IMG/VR virus record: IMGVR_UViG_3300029945_000001 | Location: 144,375-208,374 of that record | Direction: 5' to 3' (one strand) | DNA length: 64,000 bases | Shown: positions 4,714 to 56,062 of the stretch, piece after piece | Position numbering within the stretch: position 1 is the first letter of the stretch | Layout: each line of letters starts with the position of its first letter | Translations under genes and position numbers: made by a program | Notes under the pieces: model-generated | Told to the model about the DNA's origin: nothing | Database searches by the model: none | What the model saw: only the letters and a program-made list of their open reading frames with translations

Positions 4714-5271
4714 ATGGCTTTTTCAAAATGGTTAGTTTTTAAACATCGTACAAAAGAAATTACGGGAGATATTGATTTATCGAATTATATAATTGGTAAA
4801 CTCGATATCGATGAAAAAGAAGTTGAAACTATTAGTAGTTATATGAATGAACTTATTAAATATGGCGGTATTCCTTATGGTATTAATATGGAGTTTTTAA
4901 TTAAAACTATTAGAAATACTTTTAAATCTACACACATTCCGGCATATATTGTATCTTTATTTAGTGTTATGGTTGGTGAATTTGTTTTATTGAGTCTCAT
5001 TCTACTACAGAAAATAGGATACATTATTGGATTTACGAGATTAACATTTATTTCAGATAAAGTAGATAATTCATATAAGAAATTTAAATTTGGTGTATCT
5101 TTGAATTTATACATTTCTAGAACATATTCTCATACAACAAGTATTATTGGTTTAGTAGTTTTTATTATATTTATTCCAGTATTTGTTATTAAAGATATCA
5201 TAGACTTTATTCGTATGTTTATATATGTTGAGAAAATTAAATATACACGTTTTTCCATGGAGGATCTGTAA
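4714..5271 (+). CDS. Hypothetical membrane protein
   Basis: Two hydrophobic stretches (AYIVSLFSVMVGEFVLLSLILL; IIGLVVFIIFIPVFVI). Confidence 0.55.
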   Translation: MAFSKWLVFKHRTKEITGDIDLSNYIIGKLDIDEKEVETISSYMNELIKYGGIPYGINMEFLIKTIRNTFKSTHIPAYIVSLFSVMVGEFVLLSLILLQKIGYIIGFTRLTFISDKVDNSYKKFKFGVSLNLYISRTYSHTTSIIGLVVFIIFIPVFVIKDIIDFIRMFIYVEKIKYTRFSMEDL

Positions 5272-7688
5272 TGGAGTTTTCATCATCTAAAATTATTAAA
5301 ACAGAATATGTACGTATTATTAATGAGATTACTGATGTTTATACAAAACGTCACATCGTTGATTATAAAAAGAGTATTCTTATACAAGACCTTTATCCAA
5401 ATTTAGATAAATATATGAAAGAAACTTATACTATTGATAAATATCTAAACGATCTTGTTAGTAGATTGGAAGGTAATATTTTTGTTGACTATGTCACTAT
5501 TTATCATGAGTCAAAACGTATTCTTATTTCTATAAATCCTGATGCTATTAAATACGGTGCCGCAAAAGCAAAAACCCTACATATGCAATATGTTACTGAT
5601 TTGTATGGTAAAATTTCTAAAGCTATTATTGATGGCGATGGTAAGATATTTACTGTATATGAATATATGAAAAATAAAGTTTTCAAGGATGTTCGTGAAG
5701 CATTAACAGATTGTCCCCCAACTAAGTATATCACATTTAAATGTTTTGATAAAGAGTTTAAATTGAATGTTGTCGAATATAAACTTATTAAAACAATTAC
5801 TGAAGGTACTAGGGTAATATTCCAGTTTGAGAAATATAATGAAAAATCAACTGATGATGTAGCTAATTATGAACATACATTGAAACGCCTTTCGGATTTT
5901 ATTATTTCTGCATATAATAAAAGAAAGACTAAACTGACAATTAAATCAGGATTGATAGTAGAACTATTGTTAGAGAAAGAAAAATTTGGTATTACTAAAG
6001 ATATTATTAACTATATTAATGAAAAATATGGTTATAGTCTTTTTAATATAAACGAAGCTACATGTATTGTTGTATTCACTAATAATAAGTTTAATAACAC
6101 ACAAGACAACGAGGTCTGCATGACAACGATACAAGAATATACCGAAAATATTTGTAATGTGGCTCGTGAAAAAACTGAAGAATATATTCAAAACATTACT
6201 TCAGGTGATATTATTTCTGGTACTACTTTTATTATGGAAAAAGATAATAACATTGATTTAAATAAAGTTATTAAACTCTTAAAAACTCTTACTATTTATG
6301 CTGAAAAGAAATTCTATCTTAATGATATTGCATATCCTATTGCTAGATATAATGTAAATTTTGATAAATCTGAAGAATGTATTGCGGGTACAAGATTTTA
6401 CTTTAATTTTACTAAAGCAAATATTGATGAAATTAATATGAATCAAAGAATTAAATATGAAGAAAATTTGAAGATTAAAGAAGCTATACATACACTTAAA
6501 TCCGAAACAGATCATTTTAAACATATTAAAATTACTAGTAATAAATATGTCTGCGATGAACTTTATAAACATAAACAATATATTGAAGAAGTATATAACT
6601 TTGTGACATTGTGGGGTGTGACTATAGATGGTGAACAACTAAGTATTACTTTTCATCGCTTTTGTTTACTGGCAAAAAAGCCGTATCGTGTTAAAATAAT
6701 TTTACATAATGAGAAAGAAAAATTAAATAAAAAATCTGAATATAAAACTACTGGTCGTGAAGGTACAGAAGGTGTTATTGAACATATCGTTCCAGATAGC
6801 TATGTACATGTTGATGAGAATGACCACTATTCAAAGTTTAGAGACATTTGTAATCAGATTGTTCTTAAAGCTTGTAAAATTGGTGAAGATGTTGTTAATG
6901 ATAGTAAATTTAATATTATACATACAAATGATATCCATGTCCAAACTACTGAACTTAGTTTTCTTAAAATAGATGATATTATTAAATATATTAAGAATAA
7001 ATCTATTTATGTTGAGGAATATTTTACTATAAACGATATTAAATATCCTATTCGTAAGTATGGTTTGAAGTATAGAAGTTATAGTAATGATTGTTTTATA
7101 TTTAGTATTAGGGTAAAACCACCAGAACTTATTGAGTGGTCAGAACATCATACATACTCTAACAATATTGATTTGAAAACAATACTTGGAACCTTGGTAC
7201 TGAGAAAAGATATACCGAGCAAATGTAATACTAATGAAATCGTAATTAGTAATCCTTATATTGTTAAAGAACTAGTTAAACATCATAAGTATATTGAGAA
7301 GATTACTAATTGGAAGCTGATGAGCTATATAGAGGATTGTGTTACATTTAAATACTTTGATGATTATGATAAAGTTGAGAAAAACACCAGTCCTACCATT
7401 AAAGTAGATTATACAGATAATCTTATTAATTATAAAACTTATATTAAAGAATTCCGTAAAGATATGGATGCTGTTGCTTTTATTAATATACTTCTTCGTT
7501 CCAGTATATTTGTTTTAAATAATAAACATATTGGTCAAGATTTTCATCAGTCTTCATACATTATTGATATTATTGGAGATGATGTATATGATAAATTAAC
7601 TCCAGAAGTTAATGAAATCTTTAATAACAATGATTATTATACTGGTGATATGGATGAAAATGGTATTCGTATTAAATTGAAGAAATAG
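5271..7688 (+). CDS. Hypothetical 805-aa protein with internal repeats and an embedded RNAP-beta-like segment
   Basis: Long ORF coupled to the upstream stop. Repeated F-x-x-N-D-I-x-Y-P-I / EL-x-KH-x-x-YIE units. Contains YKTTGREGTEGVIEHIVP. Confidence 0.75.
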   Translation: MEFSSSKIIKTEYVRIINEITDVYTKRHIVDYKKSILIQDLYPNLDKYMKETYTIDKYLNDLVSRLEGNIFVDYVTIYHESKRILISINPDAIKYGAAKAKTLHMQYVTDLYGKISKAIIDGDGKIFTVYEYMKNKVFKDVREALTDCPPTKYITFKCFDKEFKLNVVEYKLIKTITEGTRVIFQFEKYNEKSTDDVANYEHTLKRLSDFIISAYNKRKTKLTIKSGLIVELLLEKEKFGITKDIINYINEKYGYSLFNINEATCIVVFTNNKFNNTQDNEVCMTTIQEYTENICNVAREKTEEYIQNITSGDIISGTTFIMEKDNNIDLNKVIKLLKTLTIYAEKKFYLNDIAYPIARYNVNFDKSEECIAGTRFYFNFTKANIDEINMNQRIKYEENLKIKEAIHTLKSETDHFKHIKITSNKYVCDELYKHKQYIEEVYNFVTLWGVTIDGEQLSITFHRFCLLAKKPYRVKIILHNEKEKLNKKSEYKTTGREGTEGVIEHIVPDSYVHVDENDHYSKFRDICNQIVLKACKIGEDVVNDSKFNIIHTNDIHVQTTELSFLKIDDIIKYIKNKSIYVEEYFTINDIKYPIRKYGLKYRSYSNDCFIFSIRVKPPELIEWSEHHTYSNNIDLKTILGTLVLRKDIPSKCNTNEIVISNPYIVKELVKHHKYIEKITNWKLMSYIEDCVTFKYFDDYDKVEKNTSPTIKVDYTDNLINYKTYIKEFRKDMDAVAFINILLRSSIFVLNNKHIGQDFHQSSYIIDIIGDDVYDKLTPEVNEIFNNNDYYTGDMDENGIRIKLKK
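6741..6821 (+). repeat. Dispersed repeat, near-copy of 55127-55207 (RNAP beta catalytic-lysine region)
   Basis: First 24 nt identical; 49/54 and 68/81 identical by manual alignment; same reading frame. Confidence 0.9.
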
Positions 7689-7694
7689 ACAATT

Positions 7695-7730
7695 ATAAGG
7701 GGGTACGGGCAATTGCCCGTACCCCCTTAT
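7695..7730. terminator. Perfect 36-bp palindrome, bidirectional terminator
   Basis: ataagggggtacgggcaa|ttgcccgtacccccttat between convergent genes. Confidence 0.75.
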
Positions 7731-15346: not shown

Positions 15347-15376
15347 AGAGTGATGTGGGATATCCCACATCACTCT
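15347..15376 (+). terminator. Perfect 30-bp palindrome/terminator after helicase
   Basis: agagtgatgtgggat|atcccacatcactct followed by gttt. Confidence 0.65.
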
Positions 15377-19154: not shown

Positions 19155-19958
19155 TTAATCATAAACCAATTTACTCAAAGTCAATTTAAAATTATGTTCT
19201 ACCATTTGAAATGATTGAATAACTGTAGCATATGCATCTATTTGAATAGCAAATATTCTTAATATATTACTCAAGTCACGAATATCATCAGTTGTTAAGT
19301 TAAATGTTTTCTTGTTGTTTTCTAATTGTGAAATTATTTTATCTGTTTCTTTCTCTAAATCAAATATATGTTTTCCATGAGAAATAGAGTCTTTGAAAGT
19401 ATCATCTAGTTTCAGTAAATGATCTGTAATATAATTTAAATCTTCTACGGAAGAAACAACATTTTTCAAAATGGTATTAGAAATACTATTTTTTACAAAT
19501 ATAGTTTGTAGTTGTTTTTCAAGATATGAAATATCTACTTTATTGATCTTTTCTAGAATATGTCTAATTTTATGAAATTCTTTATTTATTATAAATTTAT
19601 GCATAACCTCTATAGTGTCATTGATATCTATTTTATCAAGAAGTTTAAATAATGTATCTGTAGCATATCTATACGTACATATCATTCCGGTTGGTATATA
19701 GATCATAGAAAACATATTTATTTCTTTATTTTTTAGATAAGAATTTACAGCAGTATGATTAGAATCAACAAATACTTTTAATTCTGATCTTTTAAAATCA
19801 CTAAATAAGCCTAATATACTTGTACTAAGATTCTTAAAATATTTAATAAAGAAATCAAATATTTTATTTTGGAATGAAATATTTTCTAATCCATAATAGT
19901 CAATATCTGTCAGATACTGATTTAAAGGAACATACGAAATGTCTGTTCTGTAAATCAT
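19155..19958 (-). CDS. Hypothetical, possible virion protein
   Basis: 267-aa helical ORF at the end of a minus-strand structural operon. Confidence 0.5.
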   Translation of the reverse strand: MIYRTDISYVPLNQYLTDIDYYGLENISFQNKIFDFFIKYFKNLSTSILGLFSDFKRSELKVFVDSNHTAVNSYLKNKEINMFSMIYIPTGMICTYRYATDTLFKLLDKIDINDTIEVMHKFIINKEFHKIRHILEKINKVDISYLEKQLQTIFVKNSISNTILKNVVSSVEDLNYITDHLLKLDDTFKDSISHGKHIFDLEKETDKIISQLENNKKTFNLTTDDIRDLSNILRIFAIQIDAYATVIQSFQMVEHNFKLTLSKLVYD

Positions 19959-26308: not shown

Positions 26309-27034
26309 CTACTGCGTCGGGCCAAGGATCGTGCCCTTAGCTATCCAAGTCACATTTGAAATGCCGGTGATCGCATAACCGGGCGGGCCACCGTTCCCGC
26401 CGCCGTTGTATGATCCGACAGACCCGTTTTGGCCGTACGCACCGGGGGCTCCCCCAGCACCACTGGAACCAGCACCAGAGGTGCCGCCGCCCTGAGCGCC
26501 GCCACCTACCGACAGGGTTCCTGAATTGCCGGCGCCGTTATATCCGTTTGACGGACTCCATCCGGGAACTGCCCCTGCGCCGCCGCCACCGTTGCCGCCC
26601 CAGCCATAAGTCGTGTATTCACATCCGCCACCGCCACCACCACCACCGCCACTCTGGATCGTGCCTAAATTTGTGATTGTGATTTTCTGCAAGGTGGAAA
26701 TGGCAGGGCCACCGCTGCCACCGCTACCGCCACCGCCATCACCACCACCGCCACCGCCGCCCTGGCCGCCGGCACCTACAATATAAGCACCAACCATTAC
26801 ATTAAGAGAAATATTAGAACTAGCAGGAAAACTATTGATAGTTAGTGCATACGTACTTGTTGATATCGATCCGATAATTGCAGATGAAGCAATATTTAAT
26901 TTGACATTAATAGGATTTTTACCATTCCAACCATAATTAGTAGTAAGATCAGTATTTAATACGTAATTATAAATAGTTCCAGATAAATTTATTACTACTG
27001 ATTGTACAGAGCTGGCAGGATTGAGTATAAACAT
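26309..27034 (-). CDS. T2/T6 gp38-like glycine-rich receptor-binding adhesin
   Basis: beta-rich N-terminus then GAGGQGGGGG / ITNLGTIQSGGGGGGGG polyglycine repeats and a terminal GYAITG..VTWI..GTILG motif. Confidence 0.8.
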   Translation of the reverse strand: MFILNPASSVQSVVINLSGTIYNYVLNTDLTTNYGWNGKNPINVKLNIASSAIIGSISTSTYALTINSFPASSNISLNVMVGAYIVGAGGQGGGGGGGDGGGGSGGSGGPAISTLQKITITNLGTIQSGGGGGGGGGCEYTTYGWGGNGGGGAGAVPGWSPSNGYNGAGNSGTLSVGGGAQGGGTSGAGSSGAGGAPGAYGQNGSVGSYNGGGNGGPPGYAITGISNVTWIAKGTILGPTQ

Positions 27035-27818: not shown

Positions 27819-27858
27819 GTTAAGGATAGGATGAGCCTAGGCTCATCCTATCCTTAAC
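27819..27858 (-). terminator. Perfect 40-bp palindrome/terminator
   Basis: gttaaggataggatgagcct|aggctcatcctatccttaac. Confidence 0.7.
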
Positions 27859-36384: not shown

Positions 36385-36418
36385 GTATGAAGGGATGGCC
36401 TAGGCCATCCCTTCATAC
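36385..36418. terminator. Perfect 34-bp palindrome, bidirectional terminator
   Basis: gtatgaagggatggcct|aggccatcccttcatac. Confidence 0.75.
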
Positions 36419-39526: not shown

Positions 39527-40828
39527 TTGCATACATACAGAGGGGATCAAATGCATATTAACAAACTCAATCCTGATGCTATTTTAAATTTAGAATCTAC
39601 ATCTACGTCTACTAAAGAGATCGTTAGACATGTTGGTTTTTGTAACTTAGAAGAATTATATGCTGGATCAAAAGAAGCTATTTGTTTAAATGAAATTCCT
39701 TTAGGAAATAAAGATTATGCACAACAGCGTAATCGTATGTTATTCTCAAGAAGTGGTGATTTGAGTTTTATTGCATCTTGTGAATGTGGGCATTATTTTG
39801 GTAATTATTATAAAGGACAAATTTGTAATATTTGTCACAGTGAAGTTATTGACGATTTCGCTGCTTATAACAAAATTCAACATAAAACTTGGTTATCTAT
39901 TCCACATGGTATCAAAGTACTTCATCCTATGTTTTATAAGCTTCTTACAAATTCTTGGTTAAAGAGTGGGTACCTAGAAGCAATTTTAAACCCTAATGCA
40001 CAATTACCTCCTGAATTAGAAATGCATATTGATGGACAAGGTTATGTTTATTTCTATGAAAATTTTGATAAGATCATAGATTACTTTGCACGTATCAATA
40101 GTGTTACAAGTAAGAAACCAATTACGAAAGATATTTTAGAAGTTATTGCAAAGAATAGAGATTTGGTCTTTACAAATAAGCTTCCTATTTTGTCTAGTGT
40201 TGTTCATTCTGTTACAAACGATGGAACACATGGTGGTCGTCAATTTGTTGATTCTGGATCTAAACTTATCCTTAATGCTGCTACTGATTTACAATGTATT
40301 TCAGATAGAGAAACAGTTCGAGTAAAAACATTATTGAAAACTATTTATGATGTTTATTCATCTTATATCAGTTATATCGATGAAATCATTAGTGATCGTA
40401 TTGGTGCAAAAAGATCTATTTTCAGAGGTCAGATTTTAGGGACTAGAACACACTTTTCTTTTAGAGGTGTTATTTGTCCACATGAAGATAAATATGATCA
40501 TTTGTACTTGCCATGGTCTATGGGTGTTAATACTTATAAAGATCACATTATTGGTAGATTAATTGATGATTACAAAATGGCTCCTGGAGATGCTGTTCTT
40601 AGACAACGTATCGCCTTGGTTGAATTTGATAAAGATATCAATGATATATTTATTAAACTTATTAACGATAGTCCATTTGAAGGATTACCAACGACATTTT
40701 GTAGACACCCTTGTTTAAAACGTGGCGGTGTTCAATTCTTGTATATTACTAAATTTAAAACAAACATACATGATAATACTATTAATATTGGTGTTCCTGT
40801 TAGTCATGTTACGAAGGACCCGAATGCA
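39527..40828 (+). CDS. Non-virion RNA polymerase beta-prime N-terminal subunit, exon 1 (phiKZ gp55-like)
   Basis: Zn finger CECGH..CNIC, GTRTHFSFRGVICP, RHPCLKRG, ends KDPN(A) right before the catalytic loop; ATG 39551 is the likelier start. Confidence 0.9.
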
Positions 40829-41214
40829 AAGTTAATTGGCCTACTTGAAAGTAATTTCAAGATAGAATTCTCCTTAATTGCGGGAAAACCTCGTTAAGCA
40901 TCATATACCAAACATCCCTCAGAAATGAGATATACAGGATGTGGCCAATCTAATCAATTGGGTATGGTAAAAACTATGATGATAGAGAAAGTCCGCAGCG
41001 AAGCTTCTACGGAACATCGGATGATGTGCTATGAAGAACGTTCAACGATCATGGGTTTATCACCCAGTAGACTCCCAAGTGGGAAAGAAATAGGAGATAC
41101 CCTACTCCAATTGGACAGGGTAAAGATATGATCTGGTCCACATAAAGATATGTGGCGGGTAGAACATACCGGGATATGAGAGAGATAACTTCAACGACAT
41201 ATCTGGACACAACG
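40826..41214 (+). ncRNA. Group I self-splicing intron without homing endonuclease (5' end 40826 or 40829)
   Basis: P AATTGCGGGAAA 40876-87, Q GTCCGCAGCGAAG 40991-41003, R GTTCAACGATCAT 41040-52, S AAAGATATGATCT 41122-34, P7 GATCA/TGATC, P9 ccacata-aaga-tatgtgg, terminal G 41214 before GAC TTT GAC GGA GAT. Confidence 0.9.
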
Positions 41215-41394
41215 GACTTTGACGGAGATGAGATGACTGGTAATCCTATCTTTGAAAATGAAGCTGCTCGTAAGTTCAGTGTTCTGCATCCAGCAAATCG
41301 TATTCATAATACAAAATCATTTGGTATTGCATCTGGCGTATCTTTGACATATCCTGTTCTGTCTACATTAAGTGCATTCTTGTCTTCTGATTAG
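41215..41394 (+). CDS. nvRNAP beta-prime N-terminal subunit, exon 2 (DFDGD catalytic motif; gp56.1-like)
   Basis: DFDGDEMTGNPIFENEAARKFSVLHP...; in frame with exon 1 after intron removal. Confidence 0.9.
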   Translation, partial: DFDGDEMTGNPIFENEAARKFSVLHPANRIHNTKSFGIASGVSLTYPVLSTLSAFLSSD

Positions 41395-53436: not shown

Positions 53437-53472
53437 TATGAAGAGAGAGCCCGATCGGGCTCTCTCTTCATA
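53437..53472. terminator. Perfect 36-bp palindrome, bidirectional terminator
   Basis: tatgaagagagagcccga|tcgggctctctcttcata. Confidence 0.75.
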
Positions 53473-53971: not shown

Positions 53972-56062
53972 GTGTCAAAGTTACAAATCGCCGAAGAGTT
54001 TCCGAGTTTAGATAATGTTAGTGTTGATAGTCGTATTCTTGGATTACAGCCTGGTTTATATCCTCATTTAAAGAATAGTTCTGGTCAGCGCACTGATATG
54101 CACGGTTCGCATGTCAATCAAACTATTTTAGTTGATGGTAGTCAATTTGCATTTCAATTTACTGGTAAAGAATATGACTTTGGACAATTTGATATTAATG
54201 ATACTCATAGAGAACAAGATATGATTATTCTTGCTGTTGTTCAAAAGTATCCTAACATCAATTATATTCAGCAGGCACATACAGTTATCTGTAAGGGTCT
54301 CGATGATTGTAAAATCCATCACTTTATTGTTAGTCCATATACTAAAGTTGCTGATGGTTTTGGTTATGAAAATGTTTTAAGCAATAGACATTCTCTTCGA
54401 GCTGGTGAAGTCCTTTTAAAAGAAACTGTTCTCTCAAGATCTCCTATTAATAAAGATGGTGCTTACTGTATGGGTCGTAATGTTAATGTTGCATATATGA
54501 CATCTCCCCATATCATTGAAGATTCCATGTGGATCTCCGATGAATTAGCAGATAACTTAAGTTCTAGTGCTATCTATAAACAGATTTTTGTAATCGGAAG
54601 TAATAACATCCCGATTAATCTTTATGGTGATGATGTTAACTATAAATTCCTTCCTGATCTTGGTGAAACTATTTCTGATTATGGTATTATTTCTGCATTT
54701 AGAAAAACAACACCAGAAACATTTATTGCAGATACAATGCCTAATGAATTAACAAAACCTCAGGCTATGCATGATATGTGTTATGTTGCACATAAAGGCG
54801 CTAAAGTTATCGATATCGATGTTCAGATTTCTCGCGGTGCTAAAATCTCTGGCAAGTGGTATGACCAGGCTAAGAAGTATTCTGATAGTCATATTAAATA
54901 CTGTGAAGAAATTGTTAAGGTTTATGAGACGAATCGTAACTTAGAATGCTCAAGTGCTTTTAATAGATTAGTTTCTGATTGTATGAAACGATTAATTGCT
55001 GAAGGTAGACGAGTTAAAAATATCTATACAAAATGCAAGCTTGGTATTATTGGTAGGAATAATCGTCCTATCGAATTTATGAGAATTGTCGTTACATATA
55101 TTGAAAAACGCCATATGTCCTTTGGATATAAAACTACTGGTCGTGAAGGTGCGAAAGGTGTTATTGGACATATTGTTCCAAAGAGCTGTATGCCTGTTGA
55201 TGAAGATGGATTTGTTGCTGATCTTGTTTTAGATCCTGCATCTTGTATTGCACGCATGAATACAGGACAATGGATAGAACAAGGTATTAATCGTATTTCT
55301 GAATTTGTTAGACGAAGAGCTGTTGAGCTATATAAGACAGATAAACAATCAGCAATCGATATGTTATTTGAGTATTATAATGATCTTAATCCTAATTATC
55401 TAAAACAAGTTATTGCAACGAATCCAGATTTTAAAAGTCAGTGTGTGCATTTTGGAAGAAGTACTAGTGATGAAGGTGGTATTTATATTTGGTTGCCTCC
55501 GTTCTTAAAACACATTACTATGAAACATTTTGATTTCTTAAGAAAGAAGTATAAAGTTGGTATTTCTAAAGCATCTTATAAACGCGTTGATAGCGATGGC
55601 AATATCATTGCTGAGTTCGTATCGGATAAACCTGTTTGTATTGGTTCTAAGTATGTTATCGCGCTTTGTAAAGTTCCTTATCAGACAGCACCTGGTGTTG
55701 GTCATGTTAATCAATTTGGCGTTCCTATGAAGTCATCTAATCCTAATATTAAAAATCAATATACGGTTCGTATTAGTGCATTGAAATATGGCGAAGATGA
55801 ATGGCGAACTGTTGGTATGGATATGGGCGAAGATGCAAATGAAATGATTCGTTATACGAGCCTACATGCAAACAGTCCTACTGGTGTTAATGTTCTAGTT
55901 ACTGATATTTTAAAGAATAAGAATCCTACAAATATTGAACGTATCAATATTACTAATGAAGAACTTGTTAAGAAGAATAGTGTCTTAAATTTGTTCAGTC
56001 ACATGATTACAACTTTAGGTATTAAGATTGAATCTGAACTTAAAGAGGTTATTAGCCCATGA
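53972..56062 (+). CDS. Non-virion RNA polymerase beta subunit, C-terminal part (phiKZ gp71-73-like), uninterrupted
   Basis: SSGQRTDM, GRNVNVAYM..IEDSMWIS, GYKTTGREGAKGVI (both catalytic lysines), DEDG..DLVLDP..ARMNTGQ, KYGEDE. Confidence 0.93.
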   Translation: MSKLQIAEEFPSLDNVSVDSRILGLQPGLYPHLKNSSGQRTDMHGSHVNQTILVDGSQFAFQFTGKEYDFGQFDINDTHREQDMIILAVVQKYPNINYIQQAHTVICKGLDDCKIHHFIVSPYTKVADGFGYENVLSNRHSLRAGEVLLKETVLSRSPINKDGAYCMGRNVNVAYMTSPHIIEDSMWISDELADNLSSSAIYKQIFVIGSNNIPINLYGDDVNYKFLPDLGETISDYGIISAFRKTTPETFIADTMPNELTKPQAMHDMCYVAHKGAKVIDIDVQISRGAKISGKWYDQAKKYSDSHIKYCEEIVKVYETNRNLECSSAFNRLVSDCMKRLIAEGRRVKNIYTKCKLGIIGRNNRPIEFMRIVVTYIEKRHMSFGYKTTGREGAKGVIGHIVPKSCMPVDEDGFVADLVLDPASCIARMNTGQWIEQGINRISEFVRRRAVELYKTDKQSAIDMLFEYYNDLNPNYLKQVIATNPDFKSQCVHFGRSTSDEGGIYIWLPPFLKHITMKHFDFLRKKYKVGISKASYKRVDSDGNIIAEFVSDKPVCIGSKYVIALCKVPYQTAPGVGHVNQFGVPMKSSNPNIKNQYTVRISALKYGEDEWRTVGMDMGEDANEMIRYTSLHANSPTGVNVLVTDILKNKNPTNIERINITNEELVKKNSVLNLFSHMITTLGIKIESELKEVISP

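What the first reader, a model, noticed from the sequence alone, without database searches (positions are those of the whole stretch)
6741..6821. RNAP beta active-site segment duplicated in frame inside an unrelated 805-aa protein
Seen: 6741-6821 encodes YKTTGREGTEGVIEHIVPDSYVHVDEN and 55127-55207 encodes YKTTGREGAKGVIGHIVPKSCMPVDED. The first 24 nt are identical, with 49/54 and 68/81 identity overall, 48 kb apart. The preceding RVKIILHNEKEKL also weakly resembles the beta strand before the GDK motif. Established: this is the GDKxxGRHGxKGV segment with the two catalytic lysines; the second Lys is Glu in the copy. Inference: a recent ectopic capture of the phage's own conserved RNAP sequence. 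It could be a by-product of homing or break repair, a decoy for competitors' intron endonucleases (introns are known in the homologous phiKZ gp71/73 gene), or a peptide mimic.
Basis: partly seen in the sequence, partly recalled or inferred. Interest (0 to 1): 0.78.

Follow-up and report, generated by a model that had tools for sequence, protein, structure and literature searches.

The report
RNA polymerase fragment copied into orphan gene
A giant peat-soil phage carries a real, in-frame 81-base copy of its own RNA polymerase active-site coding segment inside an unrelated orphan gene; the copy brackets the spot where self-splicing introns insert in related phages, so it is most likely a decaying DNA-repair or intron-hopping scar, not a new function.

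Summary
Window 6741-6821 and 55127-55207 share 68/81 bases, with the first 24 exact (self-BLAST E 3.5e-19). It is the only strong direct repeat in the window, and its edges drop sharply to random identity. It is not an assembly artefact: six independent metagenome contigs and three independently assembled runs bridge both junctions.

The resident copy lies in the non-virion RNA polymerase beta (C-half) gene, a phiKZ gp71/73 homologue. The ectopic copy forms codons 491-517 of an 805-aa ORFan. That protein has no homologue in any database searched and no other similarity to beta.

Every interrupted homologue whose break I could place (phiKZ, PhiPA3, four metagenomic relatives) breaks inside this 27-codon segment. 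In four of them a group I intron was detected, two carrying HNH endonucleases. The window itself holds a 386-nt intron of the same family in the beta-prime gene.

The copy has lost the invariant Lys, Met and Pro. It keeps an ancestral Asp that the resident gene has since changed (dS about 0.23, dN/dS about 0.74).

Best reading: a moderately old, near-neutral scar of illegitimate break repair or ectopic intron homing. I found no support for the decoy or peptide-mimic ideas.

The parts
6741..6821 (+). Ectopic 81-nt (27-codon) copy of the RNAP beta active-site segment. It forms codons 491-517 of the 805-aa ORF. BLAST extends the match to 6737.
55127..55207 (+). Resident segment in the nvRNAP beta C-half gene (GxKxxGRxGxKGV...MPxD motif, residues 386-412).
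5271..7688 (+). Host gene of the copy: an 805-aa ORFan between RuvC-like and DNA polymerase genes. No Pfam, PHROG or PDB hit, and no homologue other than itself.
53972..56062 (+). nvRNAP beta C-half gene (phiKZ gp71/73 homologue). It is uninterrupted here.
55153..55154 (+). Position homologous to the main group I intron insertion site of phiKZ, PhiPA3 and L020 (between codons 9 and 10 of the patch). A second site, seen in L018 and probably P0016, lies about 9 nt upstream (about 55144|55145).
6767..6768 (+). The same intron-insertion position inside the ectopic copy. Differences from the resident gene lie at -3, -1 and +1 around it.
6252..6602 (+). Internal repeat 1 of the 805-aa protein (aa 328-444). 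The patch lies 47 aa downstream of it.
6963..7313 (+). Internal repeat 2 (aa 565-681), 30% identical to repeat 1 (E 2e-15). Forty aa after it comes NYKT, encoded with the same 9-mer that opens the patch (7431-7439). This may be an unfilled paralogous site, but it is not statistically supported.
40829..41214 (+). 386-nt ORF-less group I intron splitting the nvRNAP beta-prime N-half gene at ...PNA|DFDGD.... It belongs to the same intron family as the beta-site introns of PhiPA3 and L020.

Best explanation
The 81 nt at 6741-6821 are a DNA-level ectopic copy of the lineage's own nvRNAP beta gene segment. Illegitimate, microhomology-type recombination pasted it in frame into a tolerant, linker-like part of a fast-evolving ORFan. 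I think the event is tied to group I intron and homing-endonuclease activity at this exact spot of the beta gene. Two routes are possible. In route (a), an intron plus short exon flanks (about 27 nt upstream and 54 nt downstream) invaded the ORFan by illegitimate double-strand-break repair. The intron was later lost precisely, by conversion against an intron-less beta allele. In route (b), an endonuclease-induced break at a cryptic look-alike site in the ORFan was patched using the beta locus as template. Since then the copy has drifted almost neutrally as a passenger peptide with no RNA polymerase role. Shown: the copy is real and discrete, the direction is beta gene to ORFan, the active-site residues have decayed, the copy coincides with the intron hot spot, and an intron of the same family is present in this genome. 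Inferred: the recombination mechanism, the link to introns, and the absence of function.
For: The repeat is real and sharp-edged, and assembly error is excluded. Nothing else in the 805-aa protein resembles beta. For polarity, the copy lost K10, M22 and P23, which 16/16 relatives keep. It retains D19 (15/16 relatives) where the resident gene now has K, and it shares lineage-specific T3, H15 and S20. dS is 0.23 and dN/dS is 0.74. For the hot spot, phiKZ gp71|gp73, PhiPA3 and L020 carry a group I intron exactly between codons 9 and 10 of the patch. Rfam scores are 87.6, 79.2 and 71.7 bits, and the spliced phiKZ protein 7ogp_C reads ...HGG|KGV.... L018 has two introns about 9-10 nt apart inside the patch, one carrying an HNH ORF homologous to phiKZ gp72. 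The closest relative, P0016, also breaks after GR(D). An 81-nt piece of a 2088-nt gene would cover a given site by chance about 4% of the time. This window holds a 386-nt intron of the same family in the beta-prime gene (59.6 bits; 80% identity over 66 nt to the PhiPA3 and L020 beta introns). Intron similarities cut across beta and beta-prime sites, which implies past hops between sites. Literature: illegitimate DSB repair at microhomologies lets T4 introns invade ectopic sites (PMC2988022, citing Parker et al. 1999), and intron HNH endonucleases target chimallivirus RNAP genes (PMC11620839).
Against: Neither the beta gene nor the ORFan holds an intron or endonuclease gene now, so route (a) needs several steps, including a precise intron loss. 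No empty-site allele or homologue of the ORFan exists to prove insertion. The internal-repeat 'empty site' is not significant. The 4% coincidence is post hoc. It would also be expected if the active-site motif had been selected for itself. Eight Pawinskivirus genomes show no second copy of their equivalent segment, so this is not a general phenomenon.
Confidence: 0.5

Rival explanations
1. The copy arose by the same kind of ectopic event (templated break repair or replication template switching through microhomology), but it has nothing to do with introns or homing endonucleases. Its overlap with the intron hot spot is coincidence.
For: This is a single-step event, whereas the intron route needs several steps. 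No intron or endonuclease gene lies at either copy. The patch is contiguous, with no intron remnant. The 9-mer that opens the patch recurs at a possibly paralogous place in repeat 2, which hints at a microhomology junction.
Against: The chance of covering the one known intron hot spot of a 2088-nt gene is only about 4%. This genome and its relatives clearly have active histories of this intron family in RNAP genes.
Confidence: 0.3
2. The copy is retained for a function. It could be a decoy or cleavage-resistant homologous patch against competitors' intron endonucleases, or a peptide mimic of the beta active-site loop displayed by the 805-aa protein.
For: The copy is in frame and in the donor's frame. 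The first 24 nt are still identical. It coincides with a site that intron endonucleases target in relatives. Intron endonucleases are known weapons between co-infecting chimalliviruses (PMC11620839).
Against: dN/dS is about 0.74, and invariant K, M and P are lost. The 24-nt identical run is not significant (P = 0.09). Frame 2 of the patch is also open, so the shared frame is a 1-in-3 outcome. A cleavable decoy would break another gene. Repair from this copy would put Glu at the active-site Lys. A single copy titrates little. Other phages tested have no equivalent.
Confidence: 0.08
3. The 805-aa protein is an extremely diverged RNAP beta paralogue, or it shares an ancient domain with beta. The patch would then be the only part kept similar by recurrent gene conversion.
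For: Chimalliviruses encode two sets of split, highly diverged beta and beta-prime subunits (PMC12908238).
Against: The protein has no Rpb2 Pfam hit. With the patch masked it shows no similarity to beta. It has no PDB hit. It contains an internal tandem repeat unrelated to beta, and it sits in the replication module. Motif residues essential for any beta subunit are lost.
Confidence: 0.04
4. The copy is an assembly chimera.
For: None found.
Against: The sequence is identical across both junctions in six contigs from different samples and in contigs from three independently assembled runs. More than 20 peat runs hold the stretch.
Confidence: 0.01

Closest known systems
[quoted passage not shown]
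   Same: Donor-gene sequence ends up at a non-homologous site through microhomology junctions. The event is linked to a homing-endonuclease target in an essential, conserved gene. Short donor exon flanks are carried along.
   Different: Here only the exon flanks are present, with no intron between them. The event is natural and old (dS about 0.23), and the product is an in-frame peptide inside an unrelated protein. The mechanism is inferred, not observed.
Group I introns with HNH endonucleases in chimallivirus RNAP genes (phiKZ gp72 in gp71/73, phiKZ gp56 in gp55, PhiPA3 gp210)
   Same: The gene, the motif and the nucleotide position are the same as the gp71/73 intron site. The same intron family is present in this genome's beta-prime gene.
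   Different: The beta gene here is intron-less, and the feature of interest is a second, ectopic intron-less copy of the homing-site region. The published competition work (PMC11620839) concerns a different RNAP gene and motif.
Short-tract ectopic gene conversion and templated insertions at repaired breaks
   Same: The patch is discrete, tens of bases long, with sharp borders, and it was copied from elsewhere in the same genome.
   Different: There is no surrounding paralogy between donor and recipient. No empty-site allele is available to define what was replaced.

Membership tests
RNAP beta subunit (Pfam RNA_pol_Rpb2_6): is the 805-aa protein a member? | Significant match to the Rpb2 domain 6 profile | tested here: not met
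   The 805-aa protein matches 0 Pfam families at E<=1. The 696-aa beta gene scores 1.3e-17.
RNAP beta subunit (Pfam RNA_pol_Rpb2_6): is the 805-aa protein a member? | Similarity to beta outside the 27-residue motif | tested here: not met
   Flank and whole-protein alignments with the patch masked score no better than shuffles. tblastn finds only the patch.
RNAP beta subunit (Pfam RNA_pol_Rpb2_6): is the 805-aa protein a member? | Invariant motif residues (second Lys, Met-Pro) | tested here: not met
   K10 is E, M22 is V and P23 is H in the copy, while 16/16 relatives keep K, M and P.
Group I intron homing site (intron-less allele region) | The segment spans the position where homologous genes carry the intron | tested here: met
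   phiKZ, PhiPA3 and L020 carry the intron between codons 9 and 10 of the patch. L018 has two sites inside it, and P0016 breaks inside it.
Group I intron homing site (intron-less allele region) | An intron or homing-endonuclease gene at or beside either copy in this genome | tested here: not met
   There is no Rfam intron at either copy. No HNH or other endonuclease domain was found in 29 ORFs scanned with Pfam, and tblastn with two site-specific HNH proteins is negative. An intron of the family does exist elsewhere in the window, at 40829-41214.
Group I intron homing site (intron-less allele region) | Cleavage or nicking of the sequence by the cognate endonuclease | not testable with these tools
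   This needs an in vitro assay with phiKZ gp72 or the L018 HNH protein on both 81-bp copies.
Ectopic templated insertion or illegitimate-recombination scar | A discrete patch with abrupt loss of identity at both borders, and a donor identifiable in the same genome | tested here: met
   Identity is 84% inside and about 30% outside. Donor polarity comes from outgroup states.
Ectopic templated insertion or illegitimate-recombination scar | An empty-site allele or homologues lacking the patch | tested here: inconclusive
   No homologue or variant allele exists in the phage records, IMG/VR, JGI contigs, the 5.8-billion-protein index or the 1.84-billion-representative library. The comparison with internal repeat 2 is suggestive but not significant.
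Ectopic templated insertion or illegitimate-recombination scar | Microhomology at the junctions | tested here: inconclusive
   Only 3 of the 5 bases upstream of the left border match (BLAST extends the alignment 4 nt, to 6737), and 1 base matches beyond the right border. The pre-insertion sequence is unknown.
Assembly artefact | Junctions not supported by independent data | tested here: not met
   Independent contigs span both junctions with no variants.

The most novel reading that the evidence does not exclude
The ectopic copy is maintained as a working part of intron-endonuclease warfare between co-infecting jumbo phages. One version: it is a homologous patch or decoy, resistant to cleavage or binding, for the beta-gene homing site, and it alters the outcome when a competitor's HNH endonuclease attacks the RNA polymerase gene. 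A less radical but still new reading is that it is the first natural fossil of a group I intron hopping into an unrelated gene with its exon flanks and then being lost; I put that at about 0.3.
Probability: 0.06. Interest if true: 0.85.

Novelty: new variant of a known kind. Interest (0 to 1): 0.45.

Why it matters
If the link to introns holds, this is a natural record of how homing elements reshape phage genes beyond their own target. Exon flanks from an essential active-site motif would have been carried into, and translated within, an unrelated protein. That would document ectopic intron movement, so far known mainly from engineered T4 crosses, in an uncultivated nucleus-forming-type jumbo phage. 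It would also show one way orphan proteins pick up new peptide segments. It marks the GxKxxGRxG|KGV site of nvRNAP beta as a recurrent battleground, with twin introns 9-10 nt apart in one relative. If the overlap is coincidence, the finding is an ordinary, well-documented repair scar.

Tried and rejected
1. Homologues of the 805-aa protein, sought to test for a lineage-specific insertion. tblastn in phage records, the word-indexed 5.8-billion-protein search, a full HMMER scan of 1.84 billion representatives, IMG/VR and JGI metagenome contigs all returned only identical copies. The one exception was a 738-nt, apparently chimeric contig.

2. Structure. The AlphaFold2 single-sequence model has pLDDT 30 and is unusable. 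The ESM Atlas model has pTM 0.28, and the feature search only picked up the patch. The PDB sequence search found nothing.

3. Internal repeat 2 as an 'empty site'. The tails after the repeats are not significantly alike, with or without the patch.

4. Extended homology around the patch. None was found at the nucleotide or protein level.

5. Other patches in the ORFan or the window. None were found.

6. Endonuclease genes in the window. None turned up in 29 ORFs scanned with Pfam, nor by tblastn with phiKZ gp72 and the L018 HNH protein.

7. Generality. The equivalent 121-nt segment of Pawinskivirus phages occurs once per genome in 8 genomes.

8. Non-random placement of differences. The 24-nt identical run has P = 0.09.

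9. Rfam in gathering mode on the whole window missed the beta-prime intron. It appeared only through BLAST with relatives' introns and a focused scan.

10. RNA evidence. Only two 151-nt contigs from one metatranscriptome map upstream of the patch, so transcription is not shown.

Full report
WHAT IS THERE

Window 6741-6821 and 55127-55207 share 68/81 bases. The first 24 are identical, and 49 of the first 54 match. Both are read in the same frame. Self-BLASTN of the window gives E 3.5e-19, and this is the only strong direct repeat in 64 kb. Every other top hit is a short intergenic palindrome. The 24-mer occurs twice even with three mismatches allowed, against zero matches in 100 shuffles. Identity drops to the random level (about 30%) immediately outside the patch. 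Gapped nucleotide and protein alignments of the flanks, and of the whole proteins with the patch masked, score no better than shuffles. The patch is therefore discrete.

NOT AN ARTEFACT

The genome is a jumbo phage of about 230 kb from peat metagenomes (source contig 229,851 bp). 681-nt stretches around both copies are letter-perfect in six IMG/VR contigs from different samples. More than 20 peat runs hold the stretch. Logan contigs from three DNA runs bridge both junctions without any variant.

THE TWO GENES

ORF 53972-56062 (696 aa) is the C-terminal half of the non-virion multisubunit RNAP beta subunit.
- It matches Pfam Rpb2_6 at 1.3e-17.
- Its best solved relative is phiKZ gp71/73, chain 7ogp_C. 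The motif aligns to E. coli beta around 1047-1127, which contains the GDKxxGRHGNKGV active-site loop.
- Known phages are only about 27% identical, and the nearest metagenomic relatives about 42%.

ORF 5271-7688 (805 aa) lies between RuvC-like and DNA polymerase genes.
- It has no Pfam, PHROG or PDB match and no homologue other than itself in any library searched.
- It contains an internal repeat, aa 328-444 vs 565-681, at 30% identity and E 2e-15.
- The patch forms residues 491-517, in a Lys/Glu-rich stretch after repeat 1.

DIRECTION AND AGE

In an alignment of 16 relatives, the copy has lost residues that are invariant in beta: K10 to E, M22 to V and P23 to H. It shares the lineage-specific T3, H15 and S20 with the resident gene, so the donor was this lineage's own beta gene. 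At position 19 the copy keeps Asp (15/16 relatives), whereas the resident gene now has Lys (0/16). The donor allele was therefore ancestral, or from a close relative, and the resident gene has changed since. Nei-Gojobori gives dS 0.23, dN 0.17 and dN/dS 0.74. The copy is much younger than the split from any known relative, but it is not recent at strain level. It is drifting almost neutrally.

THE KEY CONTEXT: AN INTRON HOT SPOT

Every interrupted homologue whose break I could place is interrupted inside these 27 codons.
- phiKZ gp71 ends ...FHGG and gp73 resumes KGVI... after an intron that carries the HNH/NUMOD4 protein gp72. The Rfam group I score is 87.6 bits, and the spliced protein in 7ogp_C reads straight through.
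- PhiPA3 and metagenomic locus L020 have ORF-less introns of 450 and 340 nt at the identical position, with exon 1 ending ...GGTGGT and exon 2 starting AAAGG....
- Locus L018 has two group I introns (89.6 and 95.3 bits) separated by a mini-exon of about 9-10 nt that encodes (R)DGA. The first carries a 456-aa HNH protein 31% identical to phiKZ gp72.

The main insertion site maps to 55153|55154 in the resident gene and 6767|6768 in the copy. That places 27 nt of 'exon 1' and 54 nt of 'exon 2' on either side. A random 81-nt piece of this gene would cover a given site about 4% of the time. This figure is post hoc, so it is suggestive only.

AN INTRON OF THE SAME FAMILY IN THIS WINDOW

BLAST with relatives' beta-gene introns hit window 40943-41069 (80% over 66 nt, E 1.7e-10). 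A focused Rfam scan then gave a group I intron at 40812-41155 (59.6 bits, above the gathering score). The whole-window gathering scan had missed it. The intron is 386 nt (40829-41214) and has no ORF. It splits the nvRNAP beta-prime N-half gene (a phiKZ gp55 homologue) at ...PNA|DFDGDEM..., which is the catalytic NADFDGD motif. phiKZ carries its gp56-bearing intron at the same place. Pairwise similarities among these introns cut across host sites. The window's beta-prime intron is closest to PhiPA3's beta intron. The L018 beta introns are closer to phiKZ's beta-prime intron than to phiKZ's beta intron. The family has therefore moved between sites in the past.

INTERPRETATION

The patch is a DNA-level ectopic copy, and at the sequence level the 805-aa protein is not a beta paralogue. 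I commit to an origin by illegitimate recombination linked to intron and endonuclease activity at the beta hot spot (about 0.5). There are two possible routes. One is an intron with short exon flanks invading the ORFan and later being lost precisely. The other is an endonuclease break at a look-alike site being patched from the beta locus. T4 experiments show that illegitimate double-strand-break repair at microhomologies can place introns at ectopic sites (PMC2988022). Intron HNH endonucleases are active weapons against RNAP genes of co-infecting chimalliviruses (PMC11620839).

The main rival (about 0.3) is the same kind of templated repair with no link to introns. It needs fewer steps but leaves the coincidence unexplained.

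Functional readings (decoy, resistant repair template, peptide mimic) get about 0.08 together.
- The copy differs at -3, -1 and +1 around the insertion site.
- It has lost the active-site Lys and the Met-Pro pair.
- It shows no purifying selection.
- It would be harmful as a cleavable decoy or as a repair donor.
- Eight Pawinskivirus genomes have no equivalent second copy.

LIMITS

- No empty-site allele or homologue of the ORFan exists in any collection searched, so insertion is inferred from polarity and the sharp borders, not seen directly.
- The comparison with repeat 2 finds the same 9-mer at 7431-7439, but it is not significant.
- The structure model is unusable.
- Only 64 kb of the roughly 230-kb genome was examined.
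- Transcription of the ORFan is not shown.

VERDICT

This is a new variant of a known kind: an ectopic repair or homing scar. It is of moderate interest as a natural fossil that exactly brackets a recurrent intron site.

Noticed in passing
window 40829-41214 (+), within gene 39527-41394: A 386-nt ORF-less group I intron (Rfam RF00028, 59.6 bits) splits the nvRNAP beta-prime N-half gene at ...PNA|DFDGDEM..., the catalytic NADFDGD motif. phiKZ gp55/gp56.1 is split at the same site. The whole-window gathering-mode Rfam scan missed it.
   Followed up: yes
L018 5186-7318: A metagenomic relative has two group I introns inside the beta motif, separated by a mini-exon of only about 9-10 nt that encodes (R)DGA. 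The first intron carries a 456-aa HNH endonuclease homologous to phiKZ gp72. Exact splice sites are ambiguous by 1-2 nt.
   Followed up: partly
L017, L018, L020, L025, L027 and window 40829-41214: Intron similarity does not follow host site. The window's beta-prime intron is closest to PhiPA3's beta intron. The L018 beta introns are closer to phiKZ's beta-prime intron than to phiKZ's beta intron. This suggests past movement of one intron family between RNAP gene sites.
   Followed up: partly
window 55181-55183 (residue 404 of the beta protein): The resident beta gene has Lys (AAG) where 15 of 16 relatives, and the ectopic copy, have Asp. This is a two-nucleotide replacement at a nearly invariant position 27-29 nt downstream of the intron insertion site.
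   Followed up: partly
window 6252-6602 and 6963-7313: The 805-aa ORFan contains an internal duplication of about 117 aa (30% identity, E 2e-15). There may be a weaker third module in the N-terminal part.
   Followed up: partly
window 27819-27858, 7695-7730, 53437-53472, 36385-36418, 688-719, 15347-15376: Perfect 30-40-nt palindromes sit in intergenic gaps, several of them between convergent genes. They are probably strong bidirectional terminator hairpins characteristic of this phage.
   Followed up: no
L023 (738-nt ENA contig), about 445-735: About 290 nt are roughly 96% identical to window 5140-5430 (the end of the upstream ORF and the start of the 805-aa gene). They are flanked by unrelated, GC-richer sequence. 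This is either a chimeric contig or a related strain in another sample with a different context.
   Followed up: partly
window 26309-27034 (-) and 19155-19958 (-): The 240-aa ORF matches the Pfam Gp38 tail-fibre adhesin family (E 1.4e-6, above the cut-off). The 266-aa ORF has a weak, sub-threshold SAVED-domain hit (E 0.003).
   Followed up: no
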